From the NCBI RefSeq assembly GCF_006345805.1, contig NC_042998.1, positions 84,754,001-84,818,000 on the forward strand: a stretch of 64,000 nucleotides of DNA, read 5' to 3'. The stretch comes from Octopus sinensis. Lineage: Eukaryota. Within the stretch, counting starts at the first letter, position 1. Each line of letters starts with the position of its first letter. The notes beneath the pieces are model-generated. The model was not told the origin of the DNA, did no database searches, and saw only the letters and a list, made by a program, of their open reading frames with translations. Shown piece by piece: positions 1,541 through 35,136 of the stretch. The position numbers and the translations under genes were made by a program.

Positions 1541-1810
1541 GACCCTTAGAACCAACTAATATAACTGAAATTATTGTTACTGGAACAAATGTTTCTATTA
1601 AATGGCAATTTGACAAGCAGAAATCTGGTGGAGATGTATGGATAATTAAATACAAAGTCGAAAATGCAGACACTTACGAAGAAAAAAATAGGAGCTTACA
1701 AAGCATACAATTAATATTGCTAGAGGATGGTACAAAGTACGAAGTGGAAATATGGACTGTGGCTAACAATATGACAAGTGAAACATTCTTGAATACATCA
1801 TTTGTTACTG
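1541..1810 (+). CDS. RPTP exon A1: complete FN3 domain (phase 1-1, 270 nt)
   Basis: ttttttag|GA...ACT G|gtaag; PLEPTNITEIIVTGTNVSIKWQF...WIIKYK...LEDGTKYEVEIWTVANNMTSETFLNTSFVT, with FN3 W, Y and L..G..Y motifs. Confidence 0.9.
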
Positions 1811-2159
1811 GTAAGTAGGCAAATTTAAAATTCTTTTTCAGAACATAAATTTGACTTTGCTTGTATGATCTTAATCAAAACAGCAAAAATTAAAATTCCT
1901 AAAATTAGATCAGGAATAAATGTATTTCTTTGAAGGAAATAATGCTATTAAAACTTTAGAAGGTTAAAGAAAAATTCATTTTCATGGTTAGAGATTTAAC
2001 TTATAATGAAGAAAATTTCTAGTTTGATAAAGAATTTTTGTTTTTACTTTACCTATGTTATTTTTGGGAGCAACCTATTTAATTAACTGTTTTAATGCTA
2101 TGTCATTATGGATCATATAATTTCACACTATTTTATTAACATATCTTTTCTCATCCAGT

Positions 2160-2620
2160 TCTCTATTTGAGACTACTTCCCGCTGTGGGATGAAGTTAAA
2201 ATAATAGACAGAGAACACTACTAGAAAATACGAAAACTAAAAGAAACAGCACATATGCTAGGACATAATAACCTCCTAAGCAGACCGAGTGCAGATATGA
2301 GTAGCATATGGGAACCAGTATTAAGGAAGAATAGGTAAATATTAGATTTATGAGCCCTAAAATTCACTCCATAATTGCCCAAGAGCATATGGCGTAGTAG
2401 TTAAGAGCATGGGCTACTAACCCCAAGATTCCGAGTTCGATTCCAGACAGTAACTTGAATAATAATAGTAATAATAATAATATAGGAAAAATACCTTAGG
2501 AATGAGAACCCAGATTCGAAATTACCCCAGGACACCTGATGAAGGTTGGAGAGTATATCAGCTGAAATGTTGTGTTAACCTCAAGCAAAACGAGGACAAA
2601 TATTTGTCAAATGTAAGTAA
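2160..2620 (+). mobile_element. Penelope-like element 3' remnant (GIY-YIG C-terminus and terminal repeat) with a tRNA-like head at ~2383-2460
   Basis: Frame WDEVKIIDREHY*KIRKLKETAHMLGHNNLLSRPSADMSSIWEPVLR; A-box TGGCGTAGTAG and B-box GTTCGATTC; CTGATGA...GAAA motif at 2536-2567. Confidence 0.6.
2532..2575 (+). ncRNA. Degenerate minimal type I hammerhead ribozyme-like motif (PLE-associated)
   Basis: acac-CTGATGA-a ggttg gagagtatat cagct-GAAA-tgtt-gtgt. Stem I acac/gtgt; stem II and the palindromic stem III are restored if C>T decay is reversed. Confidence 0.5.
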
Positions 2621-2697
2621 TGTAAATAATCTTTTCTTATCTTTGTTATTAAACTAATTTGCATAATAAAGACTTATAAATATTTGTTTATTTCCAG

Positions 2698-2821
2698 ATC
2701 CTGATGCTCTTTCTAATGCTACTGTGAAAACTAATGGAAGAAACATTACAGTTATTTGGGTAAAACAGCCATCATTTACATATACTGCTTGTTTAACAAA
2801 TGTACCCACCTGTTCTGAAAA
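2698..2821 (+). CDS. RPTP exon B1: N-half of FN3 (phase 1-2, 124 nt)
   Basis: tttccag|AT CCT...GAA AA|gtaagt; DPDALSNATVKTNGRNITVIWVKQPSFTYTACLTNVPTCSE(K). Confidence 0.9.
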
Positions 2822-3913
2822 GTAAGTTTATCATAATATTAATTAATTTGATTTTTAAATCCAGTTGATTTACTAAACAGTAAGATATAACTTCTGCTAA
2901 TTGTATTTTTGTTATAATCCAGCTGATGGTATTTTTGTGTGTTAGATGTAATTATCTAGTAAACATTACTCAAACTGTATGTTTCAATACATATTTAATC
3001 TTTGAAAATATTTTAGGTTTTGATATCATTCCTTAATTCTCAAAGCCCTACTCATGTAACTTTCCCAATCTTGTTAGAAAGTAGAAAGTTTGCTGTCACT
3101 TTCACCTGCCAAGGTAGGTTGAATATAGTTGATTACACTTATGTGTCCCCACATGTATTTACAAGGTATAGGCACTTATTTCCTGTTTCTTTGGCATGCG
3201 TTTCTTGTTTCAGATTTCCTGTTTCTAGGATATGCCTTAATTTCTGTCATTCAAAAGTTTTATAAGACCCAACAAATTAGTGCTTTTTACTCTATTACAA
3301 TAATTACAATCTATTCTTAAACTCACCAGTATGGAAATATTTAAAATATATCACAAAATTAATCTTTTTAGTTTTAATTCTTACCATTCTCTAATTAAAG
3401 CATAGATGTAATATCAACCATGTGATGACTCCTCTACTTCTCAGAATTGATAAATTCTGATGTCATTTAGAAAGCTGGTATTTATTGATGACACTTGAAT
3501 ATCACTAAAATTATTTTCTCTGAGTCCATGCTGTATTTTCCCAATTAAATCCTTAAGAATGAATAACACCTAATTCTCACTGCATGAAGTATTAACTGCT
3601 TTTATGCTCAAAATCTAAATGAAGAAAAATTCACTTGATAAAATGCAAAAAATAAAGACACATGGTGCAAGGAAGAAATCTTTGTAAAGCTAAAGTGAGG
3701 ATAAACTTTGTGTATTTCCAGTTTTCAACCATAAACAACAATGTTATTTGAATTGCATCTTCATGTGGCGTATAATTTGGTGTCAATAGCAGATATTTGA
3801 GACACGGCTTTAAAACTTAATCTATAAACTATGTAAATGAGATGCTTGTAATGTTTGAACTTGAGTTTGTATTGTCTTCAATATATGTCAATTATGAATC
3901 TTTTATTTTTAAG

Positions 3914-4032
3914 GAAAAACATAAGCACACATACATTTACAGATCTGGTAGCTGGAAAATCATATGATTTATCTATCATTGTACATGCTTATGACAAAAA
4001 CAGCAGTGAATATAATAGTACTATAATACTCC
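3914..4032 (+). CDS. RPTP exon C1: C-half of FN3 (phase 2-1, 119 nt)
   Basis: tttttaag|G AAA...CTC C|gtaagt; KNISTHTFTDLVAGKSYDLSIIVHAYDKNSSEYNSTIIL. Confidence 0.88.
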
Positions 4033-4773
4033 GTAAGTCTTTGATATGAATTCTAATATTATTAATATTGCCAAACCTGATTTATTAGAATAGTGATAAC
4101 TCAAATATTAATTATTTTCATGAGTGAATATTTATTTTTTTACATGTATTTTTATTCCAACATTTTAAACTGAGGTAGTACGTTTTAAATTCAGGCATAC
4201 CTTATACTATGTCATTAATTGGTTTCAAGAGTCATGACTTAAGTCAAAAAACAACTTCAGTTGTATTAACTTGTCCCTAGATTAGGCAAGGTCGAATTTA
4301 CTTGGCTCTAGGCTAAACTGTTAATAACCATTCCCTGTTGTGTACTTTATTTATGAATGCATTTTCAATAATACATGGTTAATAACAACCTATTTTAAGC
4401 TTACAAACAAATAATTTTTATTTTTTAATACAGTACAGTAAAAAAATAGTAATCTAAATTTATGAATACAATTTGGCGGTGTTTACCATACATTGCGGAT
4501 GCTTTATTTATGAATGCAGTTTGCAATGACGTTTGGTAAAATAAAAGCCTTTTTTTAAGCTTAAAAACAAATTCAGTAATTATTATTATTTTGCAATAGT
4601 GAAAAAACCTAAATTATCTTAAATGTACAAATATGTACATACAATTTGGTGGTTTACATTATTGACCAAATGCCACATATCAGAGGAGGCTCTCAATAAT
4701 AACAGTGTAGTAAAACGTTGGTGTCCCAGCATGGCCACAGCTTTGAGCTGAAACCAACAAGAAAATATATGTA

Positions 4774-4828
<55 letters not shown>

Positions 4829-6090: not shown

Positions 6091-6254
6091 TCAAATTTAT
6101 ATTTATATATATAACATATAAGTTCAAATAAAAGTTATAAACCTCATCGAGGGATAATAAAATCCAGTGAAAATACTGGTTAGTTACCTATTCAAAAAGT
6201 GTTGAATATTACAATTAATATTCAACTGCAAGGTAACCAGATAAATCGTGGATT

Positions 6255-6455
6255 CATCATCATCATCATCATCATTTAACGTCCGCTTTCCATGCTAGCA
6301 TGGGTTGGACGGTTCAACTGGGGTCTGGGGAGCCCGAAAGCTGCACCAGTCCAGTCAGATCTGGCAGTGTTTCTACAGCTGGATGCCCTTCCTAACGCCA
6401 ACCACTCCGAGAGTGTAGTGGGTGATTTTATGTGCCACCGACACAGGTGCCAGAC
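6255..6455 (-). mobile_element. RTE LINE 3'-UTR terminal fragment, young subfamily
   Basis: (CAT)n tail then TTTAACGTCCGCTTTCCATGCTAGCATGGGTTGGACGG; CpGs intact; nearly identical to 54340-54540. Confidence 0.7.
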
Positions 6456-6809
6456 GATATATATATTTAAAGAAGATAAGAAAATAGGGAAATAATTGAT
6501 AAATAATTATTTATTAATTAAAAAAATTTCAATTCCAAACCTTTAGAAATTAATTAACAAATTTAAAACCATTTAAAAGTTGAATCACATCAGAGTTAGC
6601 TAAGGATTTAACAAATTAGGTGTTCAATTCCTGTAGGTTGAGTATACTGCTGCAAACTGTTAACTGATAAAATTTAGATATAAAGAACTTGGTCTAAACT
6701 TTACCAAGGGGTGGAAGGTAGTATATTTATTGGACTTATAATAAAAATTAAGAACAGAGCTGTTAAGTAAAAGAAAAAGCGAAAGTAGGTATATGAGTAT
6801 AATTGTTAT

Positions 6810-8059: not shown

Positions 8060-9512
8060 TATAATTGGCCCTTTTCATCAATGCAGACTGTCAATTTAGC
8101 TTAGAGGTTACTTAAACGAACATATCAGGGGCTCCTTTTCTTGCTGCATCTTTCAAGGCTGATTCTTCGTATGATTGAAGCGCAGCTTCTATCACAGTAC
8201 TTGCATACCAAAATGGTGGCTCAGTGTTCTGCATTTCTGTTGTTTTCCTTTCACCGCTGACGCTTCTCAACTTGTTTGTTTCTGTAGCTGCTCTCTAGCG
8301 AAGCAGCTCCTTCTTTCACTACAGTCCTCCATATTGTTCTGTCCTCAGCCCTCTCTTCCCAGGTGCTGACATCCACCTCACACTTGTACAAACTAGTTTT
8401 GCAAGTGTTCTTAATTTCATCATCATGTGAACCTGTCCACTGTCAAACTCTTTGTTATCAAGCTTGATATGGCCTTTCACTGTGCCCTCCTGAGTGAGGA
8501 TGACTGTCTTCTTTACACTGATGACCAAACCGAAGGCCTTGCATGCTGATGATAGGTGGTCTATCATTATTTGTAGAGTTAATTCACTGTCAGCAACAAG
8601 TGCCACATCGTTGGCGAAGAGAAAGTCTCTTAAGAGAAAGTGCTGTATTGATCTTGGTCTTGGCCCGAAGTCTAGAAAGATCAAAGAGTGACCTATCAGT
8701 TCTCCAACAAAGGTAGACATCTCCTGGTGACTCTTGAAATGCATACTGCAGCAATACAGCAAAGTAAATGCTGAAAAGGATTGGTGCTAAGACACAACCT
8801 TGTTTTACTCCGCTGTTGATGTTGAAGCTATCTGATATTAAACTGTCAAACTGAATAGTGGCCTTCCTGTCATCATGGAATGAAACAATGAGCTGCTGTA
8901 GTATTGGGGGACAGCCACATTTTCCAAGTACTATGTACAGTCCTGATCTGCTGACTGTAGCAAATGCCTTTGTCAGATTGACAAATGCTATATTTAGTGG
9001 TAATTGCTATTCCCGGCATTTTTCTTGTAGTTGACGAATGGAGATCATATCTGTTGTTGAGTGGTTAGATCTAAAACTCAGTGGCTCTCTGGTAGTACTC
9101 TTTCTGCTAGCTTTTGAAGGCGTTTCAGAATGATCCTCGCAAAAGCTTTTCCAGTGATGCTCAGAAGTGAGATGCCTCTACAGTTATTGCAATCTCCCTT
9201 TTCCCCTTTATTTTTGTAGAGTGATGATCTTGGGATCTCTCATATCCTGTGGAATTTTTACTTCCAACCAACATGTCTTTAGTAACTTGTATAAATGTGG
9301 AAGGAGGGTATCTTTGTTCTCTTTCAACACTTCAGCAGGTATATTGTCATTTCTGGGTGCTTTTCTGCCTGCAAGTTCGTTGATTGCAGTGGGGAGTTCT
9401 TCTTCCTTTGGTGGTATATCAAGTTCTGTCATTTCGGGGAGCTGAGGAATGGCCTCATCAAGCTGTCTATCAACATCTCACTCCTTTGTGTACAATTTAG
9501 AGTAATGTTCCA
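8060..9512 (-). mobile_element. RTE-BovB-like LINE reverse transcriptase remnant
   Basis: Minus-strand ORF pieces GRKAPRNDNIPAEVLK...PQDMRDPKIITL and LLRDFLFANDVAL...ACKAFGLVISVKKTV (decayed YADD motif); multiple stops and frameshifts. Confidence 0.85.
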
Positions 9513-9537
9513 CCCATCTTTCCATTTATATATATAT

Positions 9538-9570
<33 letters not shown>

Positions 9571-10094
9571 ATGATGATGATGATACATATATAAATATAT
9601 GTATATATAATAAATCCCCAAAAAATGAAGAACAAACACAAGAAAGAAACAACAATGCATGGACATGGTACATGCAAGGTATGAGTAGACGCCCAGGGAG
9701 GGAAAGAAAGGTAGTCTTACGTTTCAAGCAAGGTGCTTCATCAGAAACAGGAGATGGAGGAAAGTCCAAGAAAAAAAAATAAGACAGAGGGGAAAAAACT
9801 GCCAATGATCCACATGTGGTTACATTTATATAACACACACATAAATGTTCAATTTATAAGGAAAGATCCAGAGGAACAGTTACAAAGTAGCCAGATGTTA
9901 CATAAGCATCCTATGACTTTGTAACCACACTTGTGTGGGAGTTAATGCTGGGGATAAGTGAGAAGAGAACATAAGAATAACGGTAAATGGAGACAAATGC
10001 CCAAGATGTTACTTAAATCATTTAACATCTTGGGTATTTGTCTCTATTTTCCATCATTCTTATATGTATATATATACATATATGTATGTTAACA

Positions 10095-11870
10095 TATCAT
10101 CATCATAACCATCATTGTTTAATGCCTGCTTTCCATACTGGCATGGGTTTGACTGAGGACTGGAAAACCAGGTGGCTTTCATCACCTGATCCAACAATTT
10201 GATACCTCTGTAGCTATTCGTATCTAATGCATCACCTTTACCTTTGTAGCAGTTTACTATGGTGCTGCTACCCCAGTCATTGGGTATGACACCTTCATGT
10301 ATCACCTGATTGACTGTATGAGTGACTAGACTATAGCCTACACTGCCAGATATTTTAAGCATCTCAGCAGTGATTCCTGATGGGCTGGGGGTTTTCCCTG
10401 TCTTCATACTTTTAATTGCTTTATCTACCAAGGTACTGTCAATTTGGATAGCTGGTTCCTCTGTTGGGTTGACATTTGGTAGACTCTTTTTCTCCCATTC
10501 ATTCTCTTCATTTAGCAACCTTTCATAGTGGCATCTCCAAGTCTCTCTCTTTGCAGCATCATTAAGTGGAAGTGAGTCATCATCCATGTGGACACATTTC
10601 CCTCCTATGATATCATGATTCTCTCTCACACACTGTCTTGCAATACGAAACATACAAGTCTCTGGTTCTCATGACTCAGAATATTGGCAAATATTTTCTT
10701 CTGCTTCCCCTTTAGCTAAGTAAACCTATCTCCTAGCTTCCCTTTTGTTGATCGGATACAGTTTCCTTCTCTCACTCTTCTTCCAGTCCTTCCATGCCTG
10801 TTTCTTTTTCCTAATGGTCCTGTCAACTACATTGTTCCACTACCACGTTATCCTAGGTCAAGAGGGGACTTTGCACTCTCCACAGATCTGGTCAGCACCC
10901 CTTGACAGGTTGTCCCATAGGAATCTCCAGTTGTCCTCCACATTATGTGATGTTATATGCTCCTCTTTTTCGTCAAAAGCTTCAAGTAATACATCTCTAA
11001 ATCTCTGTCCATCCACAGGATCCTTAAGCTTCCAGACTTTTCTTTTCCATGCTGGTCGTCTTCTGGCTGCCATTTAGCCCTGATCCTGAAGTCGCTTTCT
11101 ACTAGCCTATGATATGAGGTGCATTCTTAACCTGGGAAAGTTTTGGCATTTATAAGTAGCCATCTTTCCCGTTTCCTGGTGAGAATGTAGTCAATCTGAT
11201 TAGTGGGCCCACCAGACTGGTAGGTGAATAGGTGACTGGTAAGTTTCTTGAAGTTAGTATTACAGAGCATAAGATCATTTGCATCTCAGAACTCCAGCAG
11301 ACTGGTTCCTTCCTCATTGTGGGAACCAAATCCATTGTCACCATGTACACCATGGAAACTCCCTGAATGTTATCCAACATGCCCCTTGAAGTCACCAGCC
11401 ACAAAGAGAAGGTCCCTATTAGTCATTGATGAGGTAGTCTGCAAGAGGGTGTCATAAAATCGGTCTTACTGTTTTCAAGTATCCCAAGCTGAGGAGCATA
11501 AGCTGAGACAATGGTTGTTAATCCATGTTGCACCGCTAGTCTAAGCTTAAGTATTCTATCACAGACTCTGACTACCTTGATTAATCAATCCATTTTCTCC
11601 ACAAGGAGTATACCCACGCCCCCAAACTCATCAATGTTCCCTACCCAGAAAATCTTATACCTATGTTCTTTGCCTGTGAGGAACCTAACAGAAGTTTCTC
11701 TTCACCTTACTTCTTGGATGCAGCACAAATCAACATGTCTCTGTCCAAGCATCTCAACAATCTCATCAGACTTACCTTTCAACTTGCAAACATTAAGTTA
11801 GCCAACTGTGATGGTGTGGAAGGTGTGGGCCAGTGAGACCCTGGGATGGGGGATAGCAACATTATGCATC
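10095..11870 (-). mobile_element. RTE-clade LINE with APE endonuclease and RT N-terminus, internally deleted and fused to its own 3' tail
   Basis: ORF 10060-10653 (WRCHYERLLNEEN...KAIKSMKTGK...SGITAEMLK...YKGKGDALDTNSYRGIKLL); endonuclease remnants at 11150-11800; the RT breaks directly into the terminal (GAT)n segment at ~10175. Confidence 0.8.
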
Positions 11871-17510: not shown

Positions 17511-17957
17511 TAGTTTACCTGTAACTGCACCAGCAATGATAATGATCATGAAATGTAATCAAAGAGGTATATGTGTAATGCTTGCACATATGCCTCTTGT
17601 AAAGTCTTGAAGAGAACTTTATGAAATCTGTATAAATAAATGCAATACATTTTAAAATTTAAATTACAGATATCTTACATTAATTTATTTCAGCTAGTGT
17701 AACACGATGCCACTGTTCTCAAGATTATTTTGTATAATAAGATAAATGTTGAAAATTTATAGTAAAAACTAAACAGAATATCTTTTGAACCTCAAAATTA
17801 AATTTCTTGTATGTAATCATTATTATTGAAAATGTTACACTGTTCAAATCATTCTTGTTGTCTAATTGTACAATAATGTAAAAATTAAAACTGCAGGTTT
17901 CTCCAATGACACAGTGAAGACATAATATTGAACAATATTTTATTTGATTTCTTTCAG

Positions 17958-18224
17958 CTCCATTGCCACCAACTAATGTGCTTAAACACAGTATTACAAC
18001 AAATAGTGCTAACATCACATGGAGTTTTAACAAGACATTATCACAAGGAAGTGAATGGTTAATTAAATATAAAACAGATTCTCACCCGTACAAAAACAAA
18101 ATAAGCGATAAGCAAAGCATTGAATTAACATCATTAGTTGATGGTGAGAAATATGAGGTAAAAATATGGACCCGTTCTAATATGGTATACAGTGAATCAC
18201 CTGCCACTGGTAGTTTCGTAACTT
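17958..18224 (+). CDS. RPTP exon A2: complete FN3 (phase 1-1, 267 nt)
   Basis: ctttcag|CT CCA TTG...ACT T|gtaagt; PPLPPTNVLKHSITTNSANITWSF...LVDGEKYEVKIWTRSNMVYSESPATGSFVT. Confidence 0.92.
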
Positions 18225-18994
18225 GTAAGTATTTGAAATGAATCTTCCTTAGACATTTACAAACTATACAGAACATCAATTGTTTTTATTATGTAATGAC
18301 TTTAACTTGGAATATTTTAACTTGATCAGAAATATTGGTATTTCTTTTAGTTATGACCCATAAACTGTGTTGCTGGTCTACTAATATACTAATTCTTTCT
18401 GTTTTTGCTCCTTGTAACAATATCTTTAACCAGTTCTGGTATTGTAAAATTTCATAAAATATCTGAAGAACAGCCATGGTCAAACTGTAGGCCTGTGGGG
18501 CTTTCTGAATGGTTCCCCAAGAAAAAATTACTATGAATTTTATTAGTAGAGTGGTTTGCTTCATGCTGAATCATGTCTCATGCAGTTCAGTTTTTTGAAA
18601 AATGTTGCCTATGACTGGTTTAAAACTAGAAAATAAGCTATTCATTGTTCGTCCCTTATTAATTATCATGGTATCTGTCAATAATTGTTTCTCTTTCAGT
18701 AGTTAAATTGCAGCTATATTAGAGCTGGAAGATTTCATTTCTGATGTGAAAAATTCAGTATTGTGTTATATATAAACTGTTTAAATAGAGAAGCAGTTGG
18801 ACTCCTCCACCTTGTTATCATCTTCCTCCTCTCCCTCCATCTTCTTCATTGTCTTCTTCTTCATTGTTGTGCCACCACCACTACCACCATCACTCTTGGA
18901 TCTAACAGTTACAGGTCCAAGGGTAGTGCCTTTCCACTTTACTAGATGTTCTGGGTGCTTATCTTGCATTTCAGTTTGGGGTTTTAAATTTTTA

Positions 18995-20041
18995 TCAGGC
19001 TGAGTAAAAAGTAAGCAACACTTTGAAACATGAAATTCATCACAATATATTTCAACAATACAGAAATTTCATTCAACGAAGTAAGTACCACTACAGCGAA
19101 CATTAGTGAAATGTGTGGTCAAGCATTGTCATGAAGAATGATTGGCCCTCTTCTGTTGACCAGTCTGGGATAGAGTAGTAGCAGTTTTTCATTCATTTTG
19201 GCAATTTAATGGCAATATGTTGCTGTTGTAATGGTTTTTCTGGGTTTTAAGAAGTTATAGTGGATGACTCCAGCAAGACACCACTAAACAGTCATCATAC
19301 CCTCTTTTTGAAGAGCTCAGGTTTAGGGAAGGTTTTCTGTGCTTCTTTTTGGTCCAACCACTTCGAAGGACATTTTTTATTATTGTACAGAATCCATTTT
19401 TCATTGCAAGTTACAATACAGTGGAGAAATGGATCGGTCTGGTTATGTAGAAGCAATGAACAAATTTCATATCTGTGCATTTTCTAATTTTCATTCAAAT
19501 TGTGTGGTGCTCTTTTGTCAAGCTTTTTTGATTCTCCATTTACATGCAAATGGTGGCAGGCAATTTTCTGGCTAACTTGAAGTTCTTTTGCCAGTTCTCA
19601 AATGGTTTTACATGGATCTTTCTCAATGACTGTCTTTAATTGACTGTCATCGATGATGGATAGGCATCCGCTACGCTCACGATCTTCAAGGCTCAGGTCT
19701 CCACTGTAAAATCCTTTAAACCATTTTCAAGCTGACCACTCAATGGTCATTTCCTCACCAAATGTTTCGTTGATATTGCAAGCAGTTTCAGCTGCTTTAC
19801 GTCCTTTTTTGAAGTTGAGTAACAAAATTGCTCAAATGTCACGCTTTGACAGTTTCATTTCGGATGATGGAAACAACAGAGAAAAAAATATCAATGGTAA
19901 TTTATTGATGCATTTGGGCAAGTCTATGTCTGTATTATCAAACTATTGTAAAAAAATGTTTAATAAAAATTCAAAACACAGCAAAAATTCGGTACAAATT
20001 CTTCATGGTTCAAAACGTTGCTTACTTTTAACTCAACCTGA
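18995..20041 (-). mobile_element. Mariner (DD34D-type) transposon, defective, 40-bp TIRs
   Basis: Left TCAGGCTGAGTAAAAAGTAAGCAACACTTTGAAACATGAA vs right (reverse complement) TCAGGTTGAGTTAAAAGTAAGCAACGTTTTGAACCATGAA; transposase remnant FLHCIVTCNEKWILYNN at 19295-19480. Confidence 0.9.
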
Positions 20042-20320
20042 ATAAAAATGTGTCTTCCCAAACACCAACCACTTTACTAGATGTTCTGGGTGCCTATCTT
20101 GCATTTCAGTTTTGGGTTTTAGATTTTTACTTGGAAGCATGCAGTTCTATGTCAAGCTATAATCTGAACTACTGCAAAGTGATTGAAAGTATAATTTCTG
20201 TTTCATTAAATTGACTTTTTAATGTTATAAAACATTATTACAGATTATATGATTTAACATTACTTTATTAACATTTTCTACACGTAATAAATGCATATAC
20301 AACTCTTTATTTATTTCTAG

Positions 20321-20349
20321 TACCTAAAGCTCTTTCTGAAGCTACAATT
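20321..20349 (+). pseudogene. Truncated copy of exon B (intact acceptor plus first 29 nt)
   Basis: ttatttctag|TACCTAAAGCTCTTTCTGAAGCTACAATT, then an abrupt switch to intron sequence GTTAATTATCATGG; 20057-20349 duplicates 20626-20918 (569-bp offset). Confidence 0.85.
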
Positions 20350-20889
20350 GTTAATTATCATGGTATCTGTCAATAATTGTTTCTCTTTCAGTAGTTAAAT
20401 TGCAGCTATATTAGAGCTGGAAGATTTCCTTTTTGATGCGATAAATTCAGTATTGTGTTATATATAATCTGTTTAAATAGAGAAGCAGTTGGACTCTTGC
20501 ACCTTGTTGTCATCCTCCTCGTATTCCTCCACCTTTTGTCTTCTTCTTCACTGCCTTCATAAACACACACCCTCACAACCACTACCACCACCACTCCTGG
20601 ATCGAACAGGTCCAAAGGCTGCCTTTCCAAACACCAACCACTTTACTAGATGTTCTGGGTGCCTATCTTGCATTTCAGTTTTGGGTTTTAGATTTTTACT
20701 TGGAAGCATGCAGTTCTATGTCCAGCTATAATCTGAACTACTGCAAAGTGATTGAAAGTATAATTTCTGTTTCATTAAATTGACTTTTTAATGTTATAAA
20801 ACATTATTACAGATTATATGATTTAACATTACTTTATTAACATTTTCTACACGTAATAAATGCATATACAACTCTTTATTTATTTCTAG

Positions 20890-21013
20890 TACCTGAAGCT
20901 CTTTCTGAAGCTACAATTATATCTACAGGAAAAAATATTACAGTTACGTGGAGTCAACGTAAACATTTTACATATACAATTTGTCTAACCAATATAAGCC
21001 GTTGTTCTGAAAA
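20890..21013 (+). CDS. RPTP exon B2 (phase 1-2, 124 nt)
   Basis: tttctag|TA CCT...GAA AA|gtaagt; LPEALSEATIISTGKNITVTWSQRKHFTYTICLTNISRCSE(K). Confidence 0.9.
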
Positions 21014-21297
21014 GTAAGTTTATTACAATATTGATTAATTTTTTTTTTTTTGATAATGCAATTGATTTACCAAACAGTAATAGATAACTTGTGTAAATTG
21101 TATTTTTCTTATTATCCAGAAGAGGACGTATTTGTGTGTTAGATTTAGTTGTGTTTCAGTACATATTTTAAGAAAATATTTTAGATTTGGACATTGTCTC
21201 TTAATATTAACCAGTATAGGTGAGGTACTTATAATATTTCAACTTGAGTGTGTGTTGTGTTCAATACATGTAAACTATTAATCTTCTATTTTTGTAG

Positions 21298-21416
21298 TCA
21301 AATTGCAAATACATCCACATTCAATAACCTGACACCTGGAATGAATTATACTGTATCTATTGTTGTTCATGCTTATGGGAAGAACAGCAGTGCATATAGA
21401 GACTCTGTAGTAGTCC
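21298..21416 (+). CDS. RPTP exon C2 (phase 2-1, 119 nt)
   Basis: tttgtag|T CAA ATT...GTC C|gtaagt; NQIANTSTFNNLTPGMNYTVSIVVHAYGKNSSAYRDSVVV. Confidence 0.9.
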
Positions 21417-21854
21417 GTAAGTTTTTTACACATGTTAATAGATTAATAAATATTAATAGATTTGATTTGTTTGTATATTGATATACCCTTGTTTGAATAA
21501 TGATATGCCTGTCTTGTTTTCTCATTTTAGATAATTTTTTTTAATACAAATAGCTTATATAAATCTATTTCAGCTAGTGTAACACAATGCCACTAGTACC
21601 ATTGTTCTCAGGATTATTTTGTATAATAATAAGATAAATGTTGGAAATTTATGATAAAAGCTAAACAGAAAATATCTTTTGTACCTCAAAATTAAATTTC
21701 TTGTATGTAATCATTATTATTGAAAATGATGTTACACTGTTCAAATCATTCTTGTTGTCTAATTGTACAATAATGTAAAAATTAAAATGGCAGGTTTCTC
21801 CAATGACACAGTGAAGACATAATATTGAACAATATTTTATTTGATTTCTTTCAG

Positions 21855-22121
21855 CTCCATTGCCACCAACTAATGTGCTTGAACACAGTACTACAACAGA
21901 TAGTGCTAACATCACATGGAGTTTTAACAAGACATTATCACAAGGAAGTGAATGGTTAATTCAATATAAAAATGATTCTCACTCGTACAAAAACGAAACA
22001 AGCGATAAGCAAAGGATTGAATTAACATCATTAGATGATGGTGAGAAATATGAGGTAAAAATATGGACCCGTTCTTATATGGTATACAGTGAATCACCTG
22101 CCACTGGTAGTTTCGTAACTT
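21855..22121 (+). CDS. RPTP exon A3: complete FN3 (phase 1-1, 267 nt)
   Basis: tttcag|CT CCA...ACT T|gtaagt; paralog of A2 (ORF 21860-22138). Confidence 0.92.
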
Positions 22122-23092
22122 GTAAGTATTTGAAATGAATCTTCCTTAGACATTTACAAACTATACAGAACATCAATTGTTTTTAATGTGTAATGACTTT
22201 AACTTGGAATATTTTAACTTGATCAGAAATATTGGAATTTCTTTTAGTTATGACCCATAAACTGTGTTGCTGGTCTACAAATATACTAATTCTTTCTGTT
22301 TTTGCTCCTTGTAACGATATCTTTAACCAGTTCTGGTATTGTAAAATTTCATAAAATATCTGAAGAACAGCCATGGTCAAACTATGACCCTGTGGGGCTT
22401 TCTGAATGGTTCCCCAAGAAAAAATTACCATGAATTTTATTAGTAGAGTGGCTTGCTTCATGCTGAATCATGTCTCATGCAGTTCAGTTTTTTGAAAAAT
22501 GTTGCCTATGACTGGTTTAAAACTAGAAAATAAGCCATTCATTGTTCATCCCTTGTTAATTATCATGGTATCTGTCAATAATTGTTTCTCTTTCAGTAGT
22601 TAAATTGCAGCTATATTAGAGCTGGAAGATTTCCTTTTTGATGCGATAAATTCAGTATTGTTATATATAATCTGTTTAAATAGAGAAGCAGTTGGACTCT
22701 TGCACCTTGTTGTCATCCTCCTCGTATTCCTTCACCTTTTGTCTTCTTCTTCACTGCCTTCATAAACACACACCCTCACAACCACTACCACCACCACTCC
22801 TGGATCGAACAGGTCCAAAGGCTGCCTTTCCAAACACCAACCACTTTACTAGATGTTCTGGGTGCCTATCTTGCATTTCAATTTTGGGTTTTAGATTTTT
22901 ACTTGGAAGCATGCAGTTCTATGTCAAGCTATAATCTGAACTACTGCAAAGTGATTGAAAGTATAATTTCTGTTTCATTAAATTGACTTTTTAATGTTAT
23001 AAAACATTATTACAGATTATATGATTTAACATTACTTTATTAACATTTTCTACACGTAATAAATGCATATACAACTCTTTATTTATTTCTAG

Positions 23093-23216
23093 TACCTGAA
23101 GCTCTTTCTGAAGCTACAATTATATCTACAGGAAAAAATATTACAGTTACGTGGAGTCAACGTAAACATTTTACATATACAATTTGTCTAACCAATATAA
23201 GCCGTTGTTCTGAAAA
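23093..23216 (+). CDS. RPTP exon B3 (identical to B2)
   Basis: tttctag|TA CCT...GAA AA|gtaagt; same 124 nt as 20890-21013. Confidence 0.88.
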
Positions 23217-23500
23217 GTAAGTTTATTACAATATTGATTAATTTTTTTTTTTTTGATAATGCAATTGATTTACCAAACAGTAAGAGATAACTTGTGTAAA
23301 TTGTATTTTTCTTATTATCCAGAAGAGGACGTATTTGTGTGTTAGATTTAGTTGTGTTTCAGTACATATTTTAAGAAAATATTTTAGATTTGGACATTGT
23401 CTCTTAATATTAACCAGTATAGGTGAGGTACTTATAATATTTCAACTTGAGTGTGTGTTGTGTTCAATACATGTAAACTATTAATCTTCTATTTTTGTAG

Positions 23501-23619
23501 TCAAACTGCAAATACATCCACATTCAATAACCTGACACCTGGAATGAATTATACTGTATCTATTGTTGTTCATGCTTATGGGAAGAACAGCAGTGCATAT
23601 AGAGACTCTGTAGTAGTCT
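23501..23619 (+). CDS. RPTP exon C3 (phase 2-1, 119 nt)
   Basis: tttgtag|T CAA ACT...GTC T|gtaagt; differs from C2 at 2 nt (I>T and junction codon P>S). Confidence 0.88.
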
Positions 23620-24035
23620 GTAAGTTTTTTTTACACATGTTAATATTAATAGATTTGATTTGTTTGTATATTGATATACCCTTGTTTGAATAGTTATATG
23701 CCTATCTTGTTTTCTCATTTTAGATAATTTTTTTAATACAAATATCTATTTCAGTTAGTGTAACACAATGCCTCTAGTACCATTGTTCTCAGGATTATTT
23801 TGTATAATAATAAGATAAATGTTAGAAATTTATGATAAAGGCTAAACAGAAAATATCTTTTGAACCTCAAAATTAAATTTCTTGTATGTAATCATTATTA
23901 TTGAAAATGATGTTACACTGTTCAAATCATTCTTGTTGTCTAATTGTACAATAATGTAAAAATTAAAATGGCAGGTTTCTCCAATGACACAGTGAAGACA
24001 TAATATTGAACAATATTTTATTTGATTTCTTTCAG

Positions 24036-24302
24036 CTCCATTGCCACCAACTAATGTGCTTAAACACAGTATTACAACAAATAGTGCTAACATCACATGG
24101 AGTTTTAACAAGACATTATCACAAGGAAGTAAATGGTTAATTCAATATAAAAGGGATTCTCACCCATACAAAAACAGAACAAGCAATAAGCAAAGCATTG
24201 AATTAACATCATTAGATGATGGTGAGAAATATGAGGTAAAAATATGGACCCGTTCTTATATGGTATACAGTGAATCACCTGCCACTGATAGTTTTGTAAC
24301 TT
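24036..24302 (+). CDS. RPTP exon A4: complete FN3 (phase 1-1, 267 nt)
   Basis: tttcag|CT CCA...ACT T|gtaagt; ORF 24041-24319. Confidence 0.92.
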
Positions 24303-25137
24303 GTAAGTATTTGAAATGAATCTTCCTTAGACATTTACAAACTATACAGAACATCAATTGTTTTTAATGTGTAATGACTTTAACTTGAAATATTTTAACT
24401 TGATCAGAAATATTGGAATTTCTTTTAGTTATGACCCATAAACTGTGTTGCTGGTCTACTAATATACTAATTCTTTCTGTTTTTGTTTCTTGTAACAATA
24501 TCTTTAGCCCGTTCTGGTATTGTAAAATTTCATAAAATATTTGAACAACAGCCATAGTCAAACTGTAGGCCTGCGGGACTTTCTGAATGGTTCCCTAACA
24601 AAAAATTAGCTTGAATTTTTTTACTAGGTGACTCACTTGATGGTGAGTCATGTCTCATGCAGTTCAGAAAAATGTTGCTTATGCCTGGTTTAGAACTAGA
24701 AAACAAACTATTTCACTGTTCATCCCTTATTAATTATCACAGTATCTGTCAGTAATTGTTTCTCTTTCAGTTGTTAAATTGCAGCTATATTAGAGCTGGA
24801 AGATTTCCTTTTTGATGTGATAATCTCAGTAGTGTGTCACACATAAACTGTTTAAACAGAATATCTGTTAGACTTATCTATTGTATAATTGAATTAAGTT
24901 AATTGTGGACACTTCACTAAATATCTTGCATTTCAGTTTTGGATTTTACATTTTTACTGGGAAGCATGCAGTTTTATCTCAAGCTATAATGTGAACTACT
25001 GAAAGGATTATATTTGTCTCGTTAAGTTAACATTTTAATGCTATAAAACATCATATAATTTTACATTACTTTATTAAAATATCCCTGAGCATCCTTATAT
25101 TATTAGAGTAATTATACAAACTTTTGTTTATTTCCAG

Positions 25138-25261
25138 ATCCTAAAGCTGCTTCTAATTTTACTATAGATACTAAGGAAAGAAATATTATAGTTACCTGGG
25201 AAAGACGCAAACGCTTTTTGTACACAGTTTGTTTAACAAATATACACAACTGTTCTAAAAA
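25138..25261 (+). CDS. RPTP exon B4 (phase 1-2, 124 nt)
   Basis: tttccag|AT CCT...AAA AA|gtaagt; YPKAASNFTIDTKERNIIVTWERRKRFLYTVCLTNIHNCSK(K). Confidence 0.9.
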
Positions 25262-27953: not shown

Positions 27954-29802
27954 TCAGGTCATCCCATAAGTTCTGCCCGATTTTACCTTTTTTAAAATTG
28001 AATGGAATTTGATAGTACTTTAGAATGACCTTTGAACGTTGGGCCTCACAGAGGCAATGACGAAAGACCGAGACCTCTAGAGATATGCTGTGACTGCGAA
28101 GACCCGACAAATAAAGTGAGTTCATGGCTGTATCCTACACCAGCTTCACACAACCAGCCCAAGCCCATTCAAACTACCTTGGATCGCAGGACAGCCTTCT
28201 GTACTTACCTTGGATCGTGGGGCGACCTGCTGTGCTTGAGGAGACCTATTGAGTCAAGTACAACAACATCAAAATAAAAATCAAATGGAAATTGCAGTTG
28301 TGATACCCGTGCCAGTGGCACATAAAAAGCACCATCTGAACATGGCCGATGCCCCCACTGCCTTGGCTGGTTTCCGTGCCAGTGGCATGTAAAAAGCACC
28401 AACTGATTGTGGCTGTTGCCAGCCTCCTCTGGCCCCTGTGCAGGTGGCATGTAAAAAGTACCCACTACACTCATGGAGTGGTTGGCACTAGGAAGGGCAT
28501 CCAGCTGTAGAAACACTGCCAGATCAGACTGGAGCCTGGTGCAGCCTCCTGGCTCCCCAGACTCCGGTTGAACCGTCCAACTCATGCTAGCATGGAAAAC
28601 GGACATTAAACGATGATGATTTGTGTACATTTAAACTAATTAAATAATATTTTACAGAATAATAGAATAAAAATTTTTTTGATTAAGACCCTTTCTAACA
28701 TGGAAGTATCCAAAGAGCATTTGAAGCACATAATGCTTTATGAGTACAAAAAAAAGAAACTCTGCAACCAAAGCGACTCAAAACATACACTCAGTTTATA
28801 GGAAAGAATGCGTAAATGAAAGAACTTGCAGAAGATGGTTTGCAAATTTCAGAAGTGGAGATTTCGGTCTTGAAGATGAAGATCGAACCAAGACATTAAG
28901 TTGAGTTTGATGATCAGCTCATTGAGGCACTACTTGAAGAAAATCCTGCATTATCAGTTGAAAAATTGGCAATAAAGTTGTATTGGCATACAACTGTTCA
29001 TTTTCATCTTCAACAACTTGTAAAGATTCCTAAACTTGGGATTTGTGGTCGCTTTCAGACAATTCATGAGGTACCCATTTTCCAAGTTGACATCTGCTCT
29101 TTACTCCATTCTCGCAAACTCATTTCATCCTTTTTGGATAGACTTGTGACTGGGAACGAAAAATGGATCTTCTATCAAAATGTTAAATCTCATGAACAGT
29201 GGCTTGGTAAAAGGGAAGAAGCTCAACCACAACCGAGAAGGAAACTTCATGGGATAAAGGTTCTTCTCTCTATTTGGTGGGATTGCAAAGGAGTAATTCA
29301 CTTTGAATTGTTACCACTTAATGCAACAATCAATGCTCAAGTCTACGGTCAGCAATTAGAGCCTTTGAACCAAGCTTTGAAGAAAAAAAGACCCGCTTTA
29401 GTAAATCGAAAAGGTGTGATGTTTCATCAGGGCAATGTACGACTTCACATTGCAAAGATCACATCACAGAAGATCAAAGAGCTTGGTTGGGAAAAAAATT
29501 CCTCATCCACTTTATTTTCCTGACCTTGCTCCTTCAGACTACCATTTGTTTCATAGTTTACAGAATCATTTGGGAGACATAACTTTCGCAAGCCAGGGTA
29601 TGTCGAAACTGACATTTCAGGGTTCTTCGCTTTGAAACCAAAAGAGTTTTACATTGGTTGGATTAAAAAGCTTGTAAATAGATGGAAGGAAGTCATAAAT
29701 AATCAGGGGAAGTACATTAATGATTAAATTTCAATTAAATATAACATTTGATCACTTGTTTTCTTTATTCGAAATTTGGACAGAACTTATGCGATGGCCT
29801 GA
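27954..29802 (+). mobile_element. Defective mariner element of a second family, interrupted by an RTE 3'-UTR insertion (~28030-28620)
   Basis: TA|TCAGGTCATCCCATAAGTTCTGCCCGATTT ... AAATTTGGACAGAACTTATGCGATGGCCTGA|TA TIRs; ORF start MEVSKEHLKHIMLYEY at ~28700; LVTGNEKWIFY, KVLLSIWWDCKG and YFPDLAPSDYHLF. Confidence 0.92.
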
Positions 29803-32600: not shown

Positions 32601-33901
32601 ATTGGCTGGTTGGAGGTGTGTGGAATGTTATGTCAGGATGATTGATGGGGAATTTGTGACAGATGGAATGGTTGATTCCCCAGATGTTGGGGTCAGTCAG
32701 GTTTTCAGGGCTGAATATCTATTTGAGTTTGTATGCCATCCAGTGGAAGATGGCCTCAATGTTAAGCTTCAACTTGGTGTTCAGCTTTTGTGTCTCAAAT
32801 GGAAATTGTAGCTTTGATCCCTGTGCTGGTGGCACTTAAAAAGCACCATCCGAACATGGCCGATGCCAGTACCACCTTGACTGGCTTTCTGTGCTGGTGG
32901 CATGTAAAAAGCACCAACCAATCATGATCGTTGCCAGCCCCTTCTGGCCCCTGTGCCAGTGGAATGTAAAAAGCACCCACTACACTCACGGAGTGGTTGG
33001 TGTTAGGAAAGGCATCCAGCTATAGAAACACTGCTAGATCAGACTGGAACCTGGTACAGCCTCCTGGCTTCCCAGACCCCTGTCAAACTGTCCAGCCCAT
33101 GCCAGCATGGAAAACGGATGTTAAATGATGATGATGATGAATTTAGGTCTGAAACTGAGGATCATGAGTTCATTGTGGGTCAGGGATTCTCTGAGGTTCG
33201 TAAACTTTCAACAAGTATATTTTCAGCCTAGTTGTGGTCATGCTATACACCTTATTGTCTCCTCTCCCTGCTGTCAACCTGATAACAAAATGCATTGTCT
33301 CATCAAACTTATGCTGTTTTGGACTCACCACCTCTGACATCCCCCAACTATTGTCAATCATAGCTGCCAATGCACACTTTGATTCCCTTGGTAATACTTA
33401 CAAACAGTATGTAGACCCGCTTATGTGGTCCAGCCTCTGAGACCTGCTGGTTTTTGTTTAGCATAGAGCATTCAGTACCTCCCACTTATGCACCTTCTTC
33501 ACTAGGTATGTGCCATGACCAATACCATTACTATTACAATGATGACTTCTGGTCTTGCCACAATGATGACTGTTGCAGAAGTTCATCATTATCTTCTGCC
33601 GGAACTGTGTGGAGCTCAGGTGTTTTGCTCATTAACACACATCACCCAGTTTGAGATTTGAATCCATGATCCCTCAACTGTGAATCTGCTGCTCTAACCA
33701 CTAGGCCATGTGCCTCCACTTCAATGTCAGTAGATAGATAAAATTATATTTACGTCAACTTACCTCATTATATAAAGTCCCTAGATATAAATTTTTATTC
33801 CAACAAAATAAAGAAAAAGCAAAAAAAGATCCTTGTAAATATTTGAACTTGAGTTTGTATTGTCTTCAATATATGTCAATTACGAATCTTTTATTTTTAA
33901 G

Positions 33902-34020
33902 GAAAAACACAAGCACATATACATTTACGGATCAGGTTGCTGGAAAATCATATAATGTATCTATCATTGTACATGCTTATGACAAAAACAGCAGTGAATA
34001 TGAGAAAACTAGAATACTCC
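33902..34020 (+). CDS. RPTP exon C4 (phase 2-1, 119 nt)
   Basis: tttttaag|G AAA...CTC C|gtaagt; KNTSTYTFTDQVAGKSYNVSIIVHAYDKNSSEYEKTRIL; close paralog of C1. Confidence 0.88.
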
Positions 34021-34144
34021 GTAAGTCTTTGATATGAATTCTAATATTATTAATATTGCCAAATCTGATTTATTAGAATAGTGATAACTTGGATACTAAT
34101 TATTTTTCATGGTTGAACTTTACATATTGTTTTATTTCAACATC

Positions 34145-34372
34145 TTAACCCCTTAGCATTCAGATTACTCTGTCTAATATAATACTTATTTATTTACATT
34201 GTTTTGAATTAATTATGTATTATCTTGTAGCTTTGATTTTTCAGTGATGTTATTGTTTAGTTTTAGAATGATGTTGTTGGATAGTTGTGAGAGGTTAGAT
34301 CTAACTGGTTTGAATGTAAAACTGGTAGAATATTTGGGCTGGATATGGTTGGTTTAAATGCTAAAGGGTTAA
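34145..34372. mobile_element. piggyBac-type MITE (TTAA ends); related copies at ~42120-42340 and 43354-43581
   Basis: TTAACCCCTTAGCATT ... AATGCTAAAGGGTTAA termini. Confidence 0.75.
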
Positions 34373-34410
34373 ATTAAGATAGTATGTTGTTAATATTATA
34401 TTTTATAATA

Positions 34411-34622
34411 AGGCAGTGAGCTGGCAGAATTGTTAGCATGCCAGACAAAATGCTTAGAAGCATGTCATCTATTTTTATGTTCTGAGTTCAAATTCAGCCA
34501 AGGTCAACTTTGCTTTCCATCCTTTCAGGCTCATTTAAAATAAGTACCAGTTGAGTACTGGGGTCAATGTAACAGTTTATGCCCTCACCTGAAATTGCTG
34601 GCCTTGTGCCAAAATTTGAAAC
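34411..34622 (+). mobile_element. Octopus-type tRNA-derived SINE; partial copy at ~59735-59925
   Basis: AGGCAGTGAGCTGGCAGAATTGTTAGC...TTCTGAGTTCAAATTC...TTTGCTTTCCATCCTTTCAGG...AAATAAGTACCAGTTGAGTACTGGGGTC...GTGCCAAAATTTGAAAC. Confidence 0.7.
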
Positions 34623-34878
34623 TAATATCATATTTTACATTGTTTGAGTTATTTGTATGATGAATAATTGTTATATATCCCACAAAAATTCAAAGGAAGC
34701 CTTAATTTGACATTTCAAGATGAAGACCATCTTACATAATACATTTCATGAAATGGTTGTTGATTTATATTGATTTATATGTTGATTTATGAAATGGTTG
34801 TTGATTTATATTTCTTCTGTGGCATTGTGAGAAGATAAAATTAAAAGATTTTTTTTATTATTTTAAAAATTATTTTAG

Positions 34879-35136
34879 CTCCATTACCACCAACTAATGT
34901 GACAAAAAATCTTACAAACAATAAATTGTTTATGGAATGGTATATTGATAGTAATATAACTGTTGCAAGTGAATGGCATATTGAATATAGTACTGAGAAC
35001 GACACTAAATATCTTAATACAAGCATCAGAAACGCAACCTTGAACTTGGTTAGTGGTAAAGAATATGAAATTAAAATATGGAGCATATCTCTTGGTGTAA
35101 TGAGTGAAACCTTTTTACTTACAAATCTTTATACTG
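34879..35136 (+). CDS. RPTP exon A5: complete FN3 (phase 1-1, 258 nt)
   Basis: tattttag|CT CCA TTA...ACT G|gtaagt; PPLPPTNVTKNLTNNKLFMEWYI...WHIEYST...LVSGKEYEIKIWSISLGVMSETFLLTNLYT. Confidence 0.9.

What the first reader, a model, noticed from the sequence alone, without database searches (positions are those of the whole stretch)
1541..35136. Receptor phosphatase ectodomain built by serial duplication of a phase-symmetric two-FN3 exon cassette
Seen: the order is A1-B1-C1-A2-B2-C2-A3-B3-C3-A4-B4-C4-A5. A exons (258-270 nt, phase 1-1) each encode a whole FN3. Each B (124 nt) plus C (119 nt) pair encodes a second FN3 type, phase 1-1 as a pair. All B and all C exons keep exactly the same lengths, and intronic flanks are still alignable between copies. 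Copy ages range from identical (B2=B3) to ~50-60% aa identity (B1 vs B4). Known: R3 RPTPs (PTPRB/J/O/H/Q, Ptp10D) have FN3-array ectodomains whose length matters for ligand access and size-based segregation. Inference: this locus is an actively expanding, probably copy-number-polymorphic receptor, i.e. a candidate variable immune or recognition receptor in a cephalopod.
Basis: partly seen in the sequence, partly recalled or inferred. Interest (0 to 1): 0.85.

Follow-up and report, generated by a model that had tools for sequence, protein, structure and literature searches.

The report
Octopus phosphatase receptor with duplicating FN3 cassettes
This is the outer part of an octopus cell-surface tyrosine phosphatase gene whose stalk of fibronectin-type domains grows by repeated in-frame duplication of a three-exon, two-domain block; the duplication is an ordinary habit of this gene family, but here the outer domains also change faster than the neighbouring non-coding DNA.

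Summary
Thirteen + strand exons (1541-35136) follow the order A1-B1-C1-A2-B2-C2-A3-B3-C3-A4-B4-C4-A5. All have AG/GT borders and the stated lengths and phases. With seven further exons they splice into one open 1111-aa frame.

The gene is an R3-type receptor tyrosine phosphatase, orthologous to O. bimaculoides 'phosphatase 10D'. Only the start of the cytoplasmic part lies in the window.

Positions 17658-24874 are a young tandem repeat with a 2.2-kb unit of A+B+C. B2 equals B3, and introns are up to 99.5% identical between units.

Argonauta hians has amplified the same cassette independently: five 1.3-kb units, 98-99.9% identical, with different breakpoints. The O. bimaculoides assembly has gaps at exactly this array. 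About one in five R3-like phosphatases surveyed carries near-identical internal FN3 repeats, so the phenomenon is family-wide.

New here: orthologous exons differ more from O. bimaculoides than their flanking introns do (12.0% against 7.6%), and pairwise omega is about 1.8 (p=0.008). That points to positive selection on the outer part.

Copy-number polymorphism was not tested, and nothing supports an immune role. Verdict: a new member of a known kind, of moderate interest.

The parts
1541..1810 (+). Exon A1, 270 nt, phase 1-1, one whole FN3 domain
   Evidence: Pfam fn3; closest to Argonauta A1' at 43% aa
2698..2821 (+). Exon B1, 124 nt, phase 1-2, first half of an FN3 domain
3914..4032 (+). 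Exon C1, 119 nt, phase 2-1, second half of an FN3 domain. 90% nt identical to C4, which lies 30 kb away.
17658..24874 (+). Young tandem repeat block of about 2.5 units of ~2.2 kb (A, intron, B, intron, C, intron). Identity between units is mosaic, 82-100%.
17958..18224 (+). Exon A2, 267 nt, phase 1-1
18989..20047 (.). DNA-transposon insertion of about 1.06 kb in the A2-B2 intron, with 46-nt terminal inverted repeats
20051..20349 (+). First copy of a 569-bp partial tandem duplication (98.7% identical to 20620-20918). It ends in a truncated B pseudo-exon: acceptor site plus the first 29 nt, at 20321-20349.
20890..21013 (+). Exon B2, 124 nt, identical to B3
21298..21416 (+). Exon C2, 119 nt
21855..22121 (+). 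Exon A3, 267 nt. Its upstream flank resembles that of A4 and its downstream flank resembles that of A2.
23093..23216 (+). Exon B3, 124 nt
23501..23619 (+). Exon C3, 119 nt, 2 nt different from C2
24036..24302 (+). Exon A4, 267 nt
25138..25261 (+). Exon B4, 124 nt, ortholog of O. bimaculoides B4'
33902..34020 (+). Exon C4, 119 nt
34879..35136 (+). Exon A5, 258 nt, phase 1-1, 73% aa identical to its O. bimaculoides ortholog
41081..47186 (+). Four small exons (41081-41211, 43851-43904, 46013-46087, 47120-47186) that together encode one more FN3-like domain
52983..53444 (+). Exon for the large membrane-proximal domain (Pfam PTP_tm, described from PTPRJ)
57005..57164 (+). Transmembrane exon (GYLIAIIVLIILLIIVVIVGIVLYMV followed by basic residues)
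61257..61341 (+). First cytoplasmic exon, the juxtamembrane lead-in to the phosphatase domain. The catalytic exons lie beyond the window.
8322..10668 (-). Decayed LINE-type retrotransposon (reverse transcriptase fragment) that fills part of the 13.9-kb C1-A2 intron
28900..29520 (+). Mariner-type transposase remnant in the 8.6-kb B4-C4 intron

Best explanation
The region is the ectodomain-coding part of the octopus ortholog of the single invertebrate R3-type receptor tyrosine phosphatase (the Ptp10D / PTPRB-J-H kind).

Shown:
- Nine FN3 domains alternate between a one-exon type (A, phase 1-1) and a two-exon type (B+C, phases 1-2-1). They are followed by one more FN3-like domain, a PTPRJ-type membrane-proximal domain, one transmembrane helix and the start of the cytoplasmic part.
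- The central 7.2 kb is a young tandem array of a 2.2-kb A+B+C unit.
- Argonauta hians amplified the same cassette on its own.
- Ectodomain exons diverge faster than their introns.

Inferred mechanism of growth: A-type and B/C-type sequences share no DNA similarity with each other. Misaligned recombination or replication slippage can therefore pair only like with like, so the duplicated unit is the two-domain period. Every unit is a multiple of three bases with phase-1 borders, so each gain or loss keeps the reading frame. Patchy identity between units (82-100%), a 569-bp partial duplication and the C1/C4 similarity point to several rounds of unequal exchange and gene conversion.

Inferred function: the array forms a heavily N-glycosylated stalk (43 sequons in 766 aa) that sets the reach and surface of the receptor. 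The excess of amino-acid change suggests adaptation to a changing extracellular partner, which remains unidentified.
For: - Exon model and open frame.
- FN3 identity.
- Membrane-proximal PTP_tm domain at 46.4 bits against a cut-off of 26.3.
- Ortholog with a single Y_phosphatase domain and C-terminal YxN motifs.
- Colinear alignment to the O. bimaculoides locus with 6.5% intron mismatch.
- Tandem architecture.
- Argonauta locus with five 1317-bp units 97.7-99.9% identical and the same exon phases (A 267, B 127, C 119 nt).
- Copies cluster within species (88-100% aa) rather than between species (45-49%).
- O. bimaculoides N gaps cut an A exon and begin 3 nt into a B-type exon.
- Family-wide survey of internal repeats.
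- The 1:1 and 1:2:1 FN3 exon patterns are already described for R3 phosphatases: PMC5336234.
- Selection: NG86 dN 0.170 against dS 0.100. ML omega 1.81, LRT p=0.008, bootstrap 95% interval 1.21-3.05, omega 1.7-2.5 under three frequency models. Exons 12.0% against flanking introns 7.6%, Fisher p=1.4e-7.
Against: - No transcript evidence shows that all 13 exons are used.
- The catalytic domain and the N-terminus lie outside the window.
- Copy number in one assembly cannot be verified without reads.
- The selection test rests on a single species pair and 519 codons. With single-copy FN3 exons only, it is not significant (omega 1.75, p=0.11).
- Among the recent paralogs, exon and intron divergence are similar, so those copies look neutral rather than clearly selected.
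- High omega also appears in the transmembrane/juxtamembrane exons on very few changes, which is harder to explain by ligand-driven selection.
Confidence: 0.75

Rival explanations
1. The cassettes are old, and the high identity of the central copies comes from ongoing gene conversion (concerted evolution) rather than from recent duplication.
For: - Identity is patchy: 99.5% over 20348-21350 but about 95% in the A exons and 87% further on.
- C1 and C4, 30 kb apart, are as alike within each species (88% in the window, 93.9% in O. bimaculoides) as orthologs are between species.
- O. bimaculoides already has at least one B*-type unit.
Against: - Copy numbers differ between the window (4 B-C pairs) and Argonauta (6).
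- The repeat blocks have different breakpoints and unit lengths, 2203 against 1317 bp. Conversion alone cannot produce that.
- Whole introns, not only exons, are shared between units.
- The two processes are not exclusive.
Confidence: 0.25
2. The near-identical units are an assembly artefact: a false tandem duplication, or haplotypes placed in series.
For: - B2/B3 and about 1 kb around them are 99.5-100% identical.
- Tandem repeats are error-prone in assembly. The O. bimaculoides assembly fails at this very place.
Against: - The three A exons differ pairwise at 12-14 sites.
- Only copy 1 carries a transposon and a 569-bp partial duplication.
- The window has no N.
- An independent gap-free assembly of another octopod shows the same kind of array.
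Confidence: 0.08
3. One reading: a copy-number-polymorphic, variable immune receptor.
For: - Lineage-specific cassette amplification.
- Omega above 1 and exons faster than introns.
- Dense N-glycosylation.
Against: - No expression, polymorphism or binding data exist.
- The orthologous family acts mainly in development and in control of receptor kinases (general knowledge of Ptp10D, PTPRB and PTPRJ).
- The same repeat behaviour is seen across many non-cephalopod R3 genes.
- Fast ectodomain evolution fits other partners as well, such as gametes, cell-cell recognition or pathogens using the receptor as an entry site.
Confidence: 0.1
4. The ectodomain is simply under relaxed constraint, either because the gene is decaying or because the FN3 domains are pure spacers. 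The changes would then be neutral.
For: Paralog comparisons give pN/pS of roughly 0.7-1.5. Variable sites among the Argonauta units are as frequent in exons as in introns.
Against: - Omega is significantly above 1, not merely near 1.
- Exons diverge more than introns.
- A 3335-nt frame in AT-rich DNA stays open, with all 40 splice dinucleotides intact. The orthologous exons checked in O. bimaculoides also keep their AG/GT borders.
Confidence: 0.1
5. The phase-symmetric cassettes serve mainly as alternatively spliced modules that give isoforms with different ectodomain lengths.
For: Any A exon or B+C pair can be skipped in frame. NCBI lists 28-30 isoforms for fish relatives that have repeated FN3 blocks.
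Against: No transcript data for this gene. The three O. bimaculoides isoforms differ only at the C-terminus.
Confidence: 0.15

Closest known systems
R3-subtype receptor tyrosine phosphatases (Drosophila Ptp10D; vertebrate PTPRB, PTPRJ/DEP-1, PTPRH, PTPRO, PTPRQ)
   Same: FN3-only ectodomain, PTPRJ-type membrane-proximal domain, one transmembrane helix. In the ortholog: one phosphatase domain and C-terminal YxN tyrosines. FN3 exons follow the 1:1 and 1:2:1 phase patterns described in PMC5336234.
   Different: Molluscs were not covered in that study. Here a two-domain cassette is very recently amplified, and the ectodomain shows omega above 1 between two congeners.
Argonauta hians GAB1597277.1 + GAB1597278.1 (one gene split into two models)
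   Same: Same domain order A1-(B C A*)n-B4 C4-A5, and the same exon phases and sizes (A 267, C 119 nt).
   Different: Five units of 1317 bp at 98-99.9% identity instead of about 2.5 units of 2203 bp. Different repeat breakpoints. B exon of 127 rather than 124 nt.
Octopus bimaculoides XP_014781629-31, 'tyrosine-protein phosphatase 10D'
   Same: Colinear ortholog. Introns about 93.5% identical in aligned positions.
   Different: The gene models start at an internal Met of an A-type exon because the assembly has N gaps in the array. Ectodomain proteins are only 72-80% identical.
Other R3-like phosphatases with near-identical internal FN3 blocks (for example Hyla sarda XP_056384175.1, Alosa sapidissima XP_041966844.1, Styela clava XP_039263207.1, Sinanodonta woodiana KAL3882876.1)
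   Same: Recent in-frame amplification of one-, two- or three-FN3 blocks.
   Different: Unrelated lineages and unrelated repeat units. Exon structure was not examined here.
Intragenic coding tandem arrays such as the LPA kringle IV-2 repeat (from general knowledge, not tested)
   Same: Multi-exon, phase-compatible units, including introns, repeated head to tail inside one gene.
   Different: LPA copy number is known to vary between people. Here variation within a species is unknown.

Membership tests
R3-subtype receptor tyrosine phosphatase | Ectodomain made only of FN3 repeats | tested here: met
   Pfam fn3 E=1.4e-30 plus Dep-1 FN3 models. Per-domain hits. Alignment to fibronectin 1FNF. The N-terminus lies outside the window and was not seen.
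R3-subtype receptor tyrosine phosphatase | Large membrane-proximal FN3-like domain of the PTPRJ type | tested here: met
   Window 52982-53440 hits PF18861 PTP_tm at 46.4 bits (cut-off 26.3).
R3-subtype receptor tyrosine phosphatase | Single transmembrane helix | tested here: met
   One hydrophobic stretch of 26 residues followed by RRKK in exon 57005-57164. Read directly; no predictor was run.
R3-subtype receptor tyrosine phosphatase | Exactly one cytoplasmic phosphatase domain | tested here: inconclusive
   Not in the window. The colinear O. bimaculoides ortholog has one PF00102 match (281 bits, one stretch).
R3-subtype receptor tyrosine phosphatase | C-terminal YxN tyrosine motifs | tested here: inconclusive
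   Not in the window. The ortholog ends ...IYENETYMNEDIYENT....
R3-subtype receptor tyrosine phosphatase | FN3 domains bounded by phase-1 introns, some with an internal phase-2 intron | tested here: met
   A exons are 1:1 and B+C pairs are 1:2:1. The pattern is described in PMC5336234.
Recent intragenic tandem exon-cassette array | Head-to-tail units that share introns as well as exons at high identity | tested here: met
   20348-22698 against 22553-24874 is 94.9% identical, with a 1-kb stretch at 99.5%.
Recent intragenic tandem exon-cassette array | Copy number varies between individuals | not testable with these tools
   No reads or second individuals. Only between-species differences were seen.
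Variable immune or recognition receptor | Expression in immune cells, or binding of non-self | not testable with these tools
   No expression or binding data were available.
Variable immune or recognition receptor | Excess amino-acid change in the exposed part | tested here: met
   Omega 1.81 (p=0.008; bootstrap 1.21-3.05) and exon divergence above intron divergence. One species pair only.

The most novel reading that the evidence does not exclude
In octopods the ectodomain of the single R3 phosphatase may be an arms-race surface. It would be positively selected and would change length through cassette gain and loss that still segregates within populations. The receptor would then act in recognition of a fast-evolving partner (a pathogen, a gamete or a self/non-self cue) rather than only as a developmental regulator of kinases.
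Probability: 0.15. Interest if true: 0.7.

Novelty: new member of a known kind. Interest (0 to 1): 0.42.

Why it matters
This locus is a clean, datable example of how a modular receptor lengthens, exon cassette by exon cassette. The same event has happened independently in two octopod lineages.

The survey suggests that recent FN3 amplification is a general and little-discussed property of R3 phosphatases. It also explains why gene models for them are often truncated or split.

The excess of amino-acid change over intron change is unusual for a conserved signalling receptor. It gives a concrete reason to look for the extracellular partner of this orphan receptor class in cephalopods.

Tried and rejected
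- A second word-index protein search with the 340-aa membrane-side part found nothing, not even the known ortholog. That index is too sparse for this gene.
- A contig look-up for isoform X2 failed. The longest isoform, X1, worked.
- Tandem Repeats Finder reported nothing because the periods exceed its 500-nt limit. BLAST self-comparison was used instead.
- A plain self-BLASTP gave no off-diagonal hits. It was replaced by a segment-against-whole comparison.
- I looked for extra decayed A/B/C exons in the two large introns with permissive tblastn and found none.
- I considered that diversifying selection acts specifically on the recent A2/A3/A4 copies. Their changes are almost all replacements, but the counts are small and intron divergence is similar, so I did not claim it.
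- Literature searches for octopus Ptp10D or for selection on R3 ectodomains found nothing relevant.
- Structure prediction was not run, because spliced sequences cannot be submitted and the sequence evidence for FN3 was sufficient.
Full report
**What is in the sequence.** Reading the borders shows AG before and GT after every exon. A exons are 270, 267, 267, 267 and 258 nt. Every B exon is 124 nt and every C exon is 119 nt. A exons begin and end in phase 1. B exons run from phase 1 to phase 2 and C exons from phase 2 to phase 1, so B+C (243 nt) is again a phase 1-1 block. Joined together, the 2301 nt give 766 codons with no stop.

**What the exons encode.** Pfam finds fn3 (E=1.4e-30, six stretches) and the Dep-1/PTPRJ FN3 models. 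Single A domains score around the fn3 threshold. B2+C2 matches fn3 across the exon junction. A sequence search of solved structures aligns C2-A3-B3C3 to fibronectin repeats in 1FNF, with each B+C pair covering one whole repeat. The 766 residues carry 43 N-x-S/T sequons.

**Which gene it is.** The best database relative is O. bimaculoides 'tyrosine-protein phosphatase 10D' (XP_014781629-31). Mapping it onto the window finds seven further exons downstream. Four small ones encode another FN3-like domain. A 462-nt exon hits the PTPRJ-type membrane-proximal model PF18861 above its cut-off. A transmembrane exon and the first cytoplasmic exon follow. All 20 exons splice into a 1111-aa frame with no stop. 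The catalytic domain lies beyond the window. The ortholog has one Y_phosphatase domain and C-terminal YxN motifs. These are the features of R3-type receptor phosphatases. The 1:1 and 1:2:1 FN3 exon patterns are already described for that group, although molluscs were not included (PMC5336234).

**Anatomy of the young repeat.** BLAST self-comparison shows that 17658-24874 is a tandem array with a unit of about 2203 bp.
- Units 2 and 3 are 99.5% identical over the 1 kb holding B and C. B2 equals B3, and C2 and C3 differ at 2 nt. Identity falls to about 95% in the A exons and 85-90% elsewhere.
- The upstream flank of A3 is closest to that of A4. Its downstream flank is closest to that of A2 (5% divergence against 13%). 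This is what an unequal exchange between two A-type units would leave.
- The A2-B2 intron holds a 1.06-kb transposon with 46-nt inverted ends.
- The same intron holds a 569-bp partial duplication that ends in a truncated B exon, consisting of the acceptor site plus 29 nt.
- C1 and C4, 30 kb apart, are 90% identical in the exon and 88% over 330 nt including intron. B1 and B4 are only 72% identical.

The history is therefore a mosaic of several exchanges, not a single event. The two large introns are swollen by a LINE fragment and a mariner remnant.

**Other species.** An exhaustive search with the O. bimaculoides protein found an Argonauta hians protein made of five nearly identical B-C-A blocks, next to a gene model for the phosphatase part.
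- Its gap-free locus (L001) reads A1', then five units of 1317 bp at 97.7-99.9% identity including introns, then B4', C4', A5'. Exon phases are the same, with A at 267 nt, C at 119 nt and B at 127 nt.
- A1, the amplified A type and A5 each pair across species (43%, 45-49% and 31% aa). The amplified copies are 88-100% alike within a species.
- The Argonauta block starts 165 nt before a B exon and ends 17 nt after an A exon. The window's block starts 300 nt before an A exon and ends inside an A-B intron.
- Unit length, unit number and breakpoints all differ, so the amplifications are independent.

The O. bimaculoides locus (L002) is colinear with the window and differs at only 6.5% of aligned, mostly intronic, sites. 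The window therefore comes from a close congener. That assembly has N gaps exactly at the array. One gap removes the 5' part of an A exon. Another starts three bases into a B-type exon. This explains the N-terminally truncated gene models and leaves the copy number there unknown, at one or more hidden units.

**How general this is.** I cut each of 168 proteins into 80-residue pieces and compared the pieces with the rest of the same protein. The set was mainly the 150 best R3-like representatives. Thirty-three have internal repeats at least 80% identical over 60 or more residues, many at 100%. Periods correspond to one, two or three FN3 domains. They include proteins from amphioxus, shad, climbing perch, platyfish, sharks, frogs (up to 3885 repeated residues), a tunicate and a freshwater mussel. 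Recent FN3 cassette amplification is thus a habit of the family. Some cases may be assembly errors.

**Selection.** Among the recent paralogs nearly all A-exon differences change the amino acid (pN/pS 5.75, 0.74 and 1.48). Counts are small and intron divergence is similar. Argonauta units vary about equally in exons (17 of 513 sites) and introns (about 31 of 708). These comparisons look neutral.

Between the window and O. bimaculoides the picture is different.
- Ten ungapped orthologous exons differ at 189 of 1579 sites (12.0%). Their flanking introns differ at 427 of 5608 sites (7.6%), Fisher p=1.4e-7.
- Nei-Gojobori estimates for the FN3 array are dN 0.170 and dS 0.100.
- A pairwise codon likelihood model that I wrote gives omega 1.81 for all 519 codons (LRT 6.95, p=0.008) and 1.98 for the FN3 array (p=0.023).
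- Omega is 1.7-2.5 under three codon-frequency settings, with a bootstrap 95% interval of 1.21-3.05.
- Limits: one species pair only. The subset of strictly single-copy FN3 exons is not significant on its own (omega 1.75, p=0.11). The few transmembrane and juxtamembrane changes also lean towards replacement.
- Gene conversion cannot explain the excess in A5 or the downstream exons, which have no similar paralog in the gene.

**Interpretation.** The structural and evolutionary reading is well supported: an R3 phosphatase whose FN3 stalk grows by in-frame unequal exchange of a two-domain cassette, repeatedly and recently in octopods. The function of the extra domains is inferred. They lengthen and re-surface a glycosylated stalk, and the replacement excess suggests adaptation to a changing partner. 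Polymorphism is plausible but untested, and an immune role is only one of several possibilities.

Noticed in passing
window 20321-20349: A truncated copy of a B exon (intact acceptor, first 29 nt) lies 540 nt upstream of the real B2 exon, at the junction of a 569-bp partial duplication. If it were spliced in, it would shift the reading frame.
   Followed up: partly
window 3840-4168 and 33827-34148; L002 626-919 and 23107-23401: C1 and C4 with their intron flanks are as similar within each species (88% in the window, 93.9% in O. bimaculoides) as orthologs are between species. This suggests gene conversion across 20-30 kb.
   Followed up: partly
L002 9882-9981 and 11035-13854: The O. bimaculoides chromosome assembly has N gaps exactly in this array. 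This is why the RefSeq models for the gene start at an internal Met, and why a separate 294-aa FN3 model lies upstream.
   Followed up: yes
L001 10001-16954 and 23244 onward: In Argonauta hians the gene is annotated as two separate models: a 'hypothetical protein, partial' and the phosphatase. By colinearity with the window they are one gene.
   Followed up: partly
L001 2906-4390: Just upstream of the first FN3 exon seen in the Argonauta locus there is a 1.5-kb GC-rich simple repeat that reads as an open Gly/Val/Ser-rich frame.
   Followed up: no
window 57005-57164 and 61257-61341: The transmembrane and juxtamembrane exons show 16 replacement changes to 1 silent change against O. bimaculoides. 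This is an odd place for an excess of amino-acid change.
   Followed up: partly
window 6250-7200, 28200-28630, 32800-33140, 36800-37130, 38320-38850, 54340-54700: There are many copies of one SINE-like element (core TTTCCATGCTAGCATGGGTTGGAC). The same family is scattered through the O. bimaculoides locus.
   Followed up: no
window 49350-50050: A long TG/TA microsatellite block of about 700 nt lies in the intron before the membrane-proximal exon.
   Followed up: no
proteins P0008 and P0009 (transcript-derived, species unknown): These are more distant relatives (41-45% identity). They carry only one B/C-like plus A-like pair, but one of them has a different FN3 block duplicated. Different cassettes appear to expand in different cephalopod lineages.
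   Followed up: no
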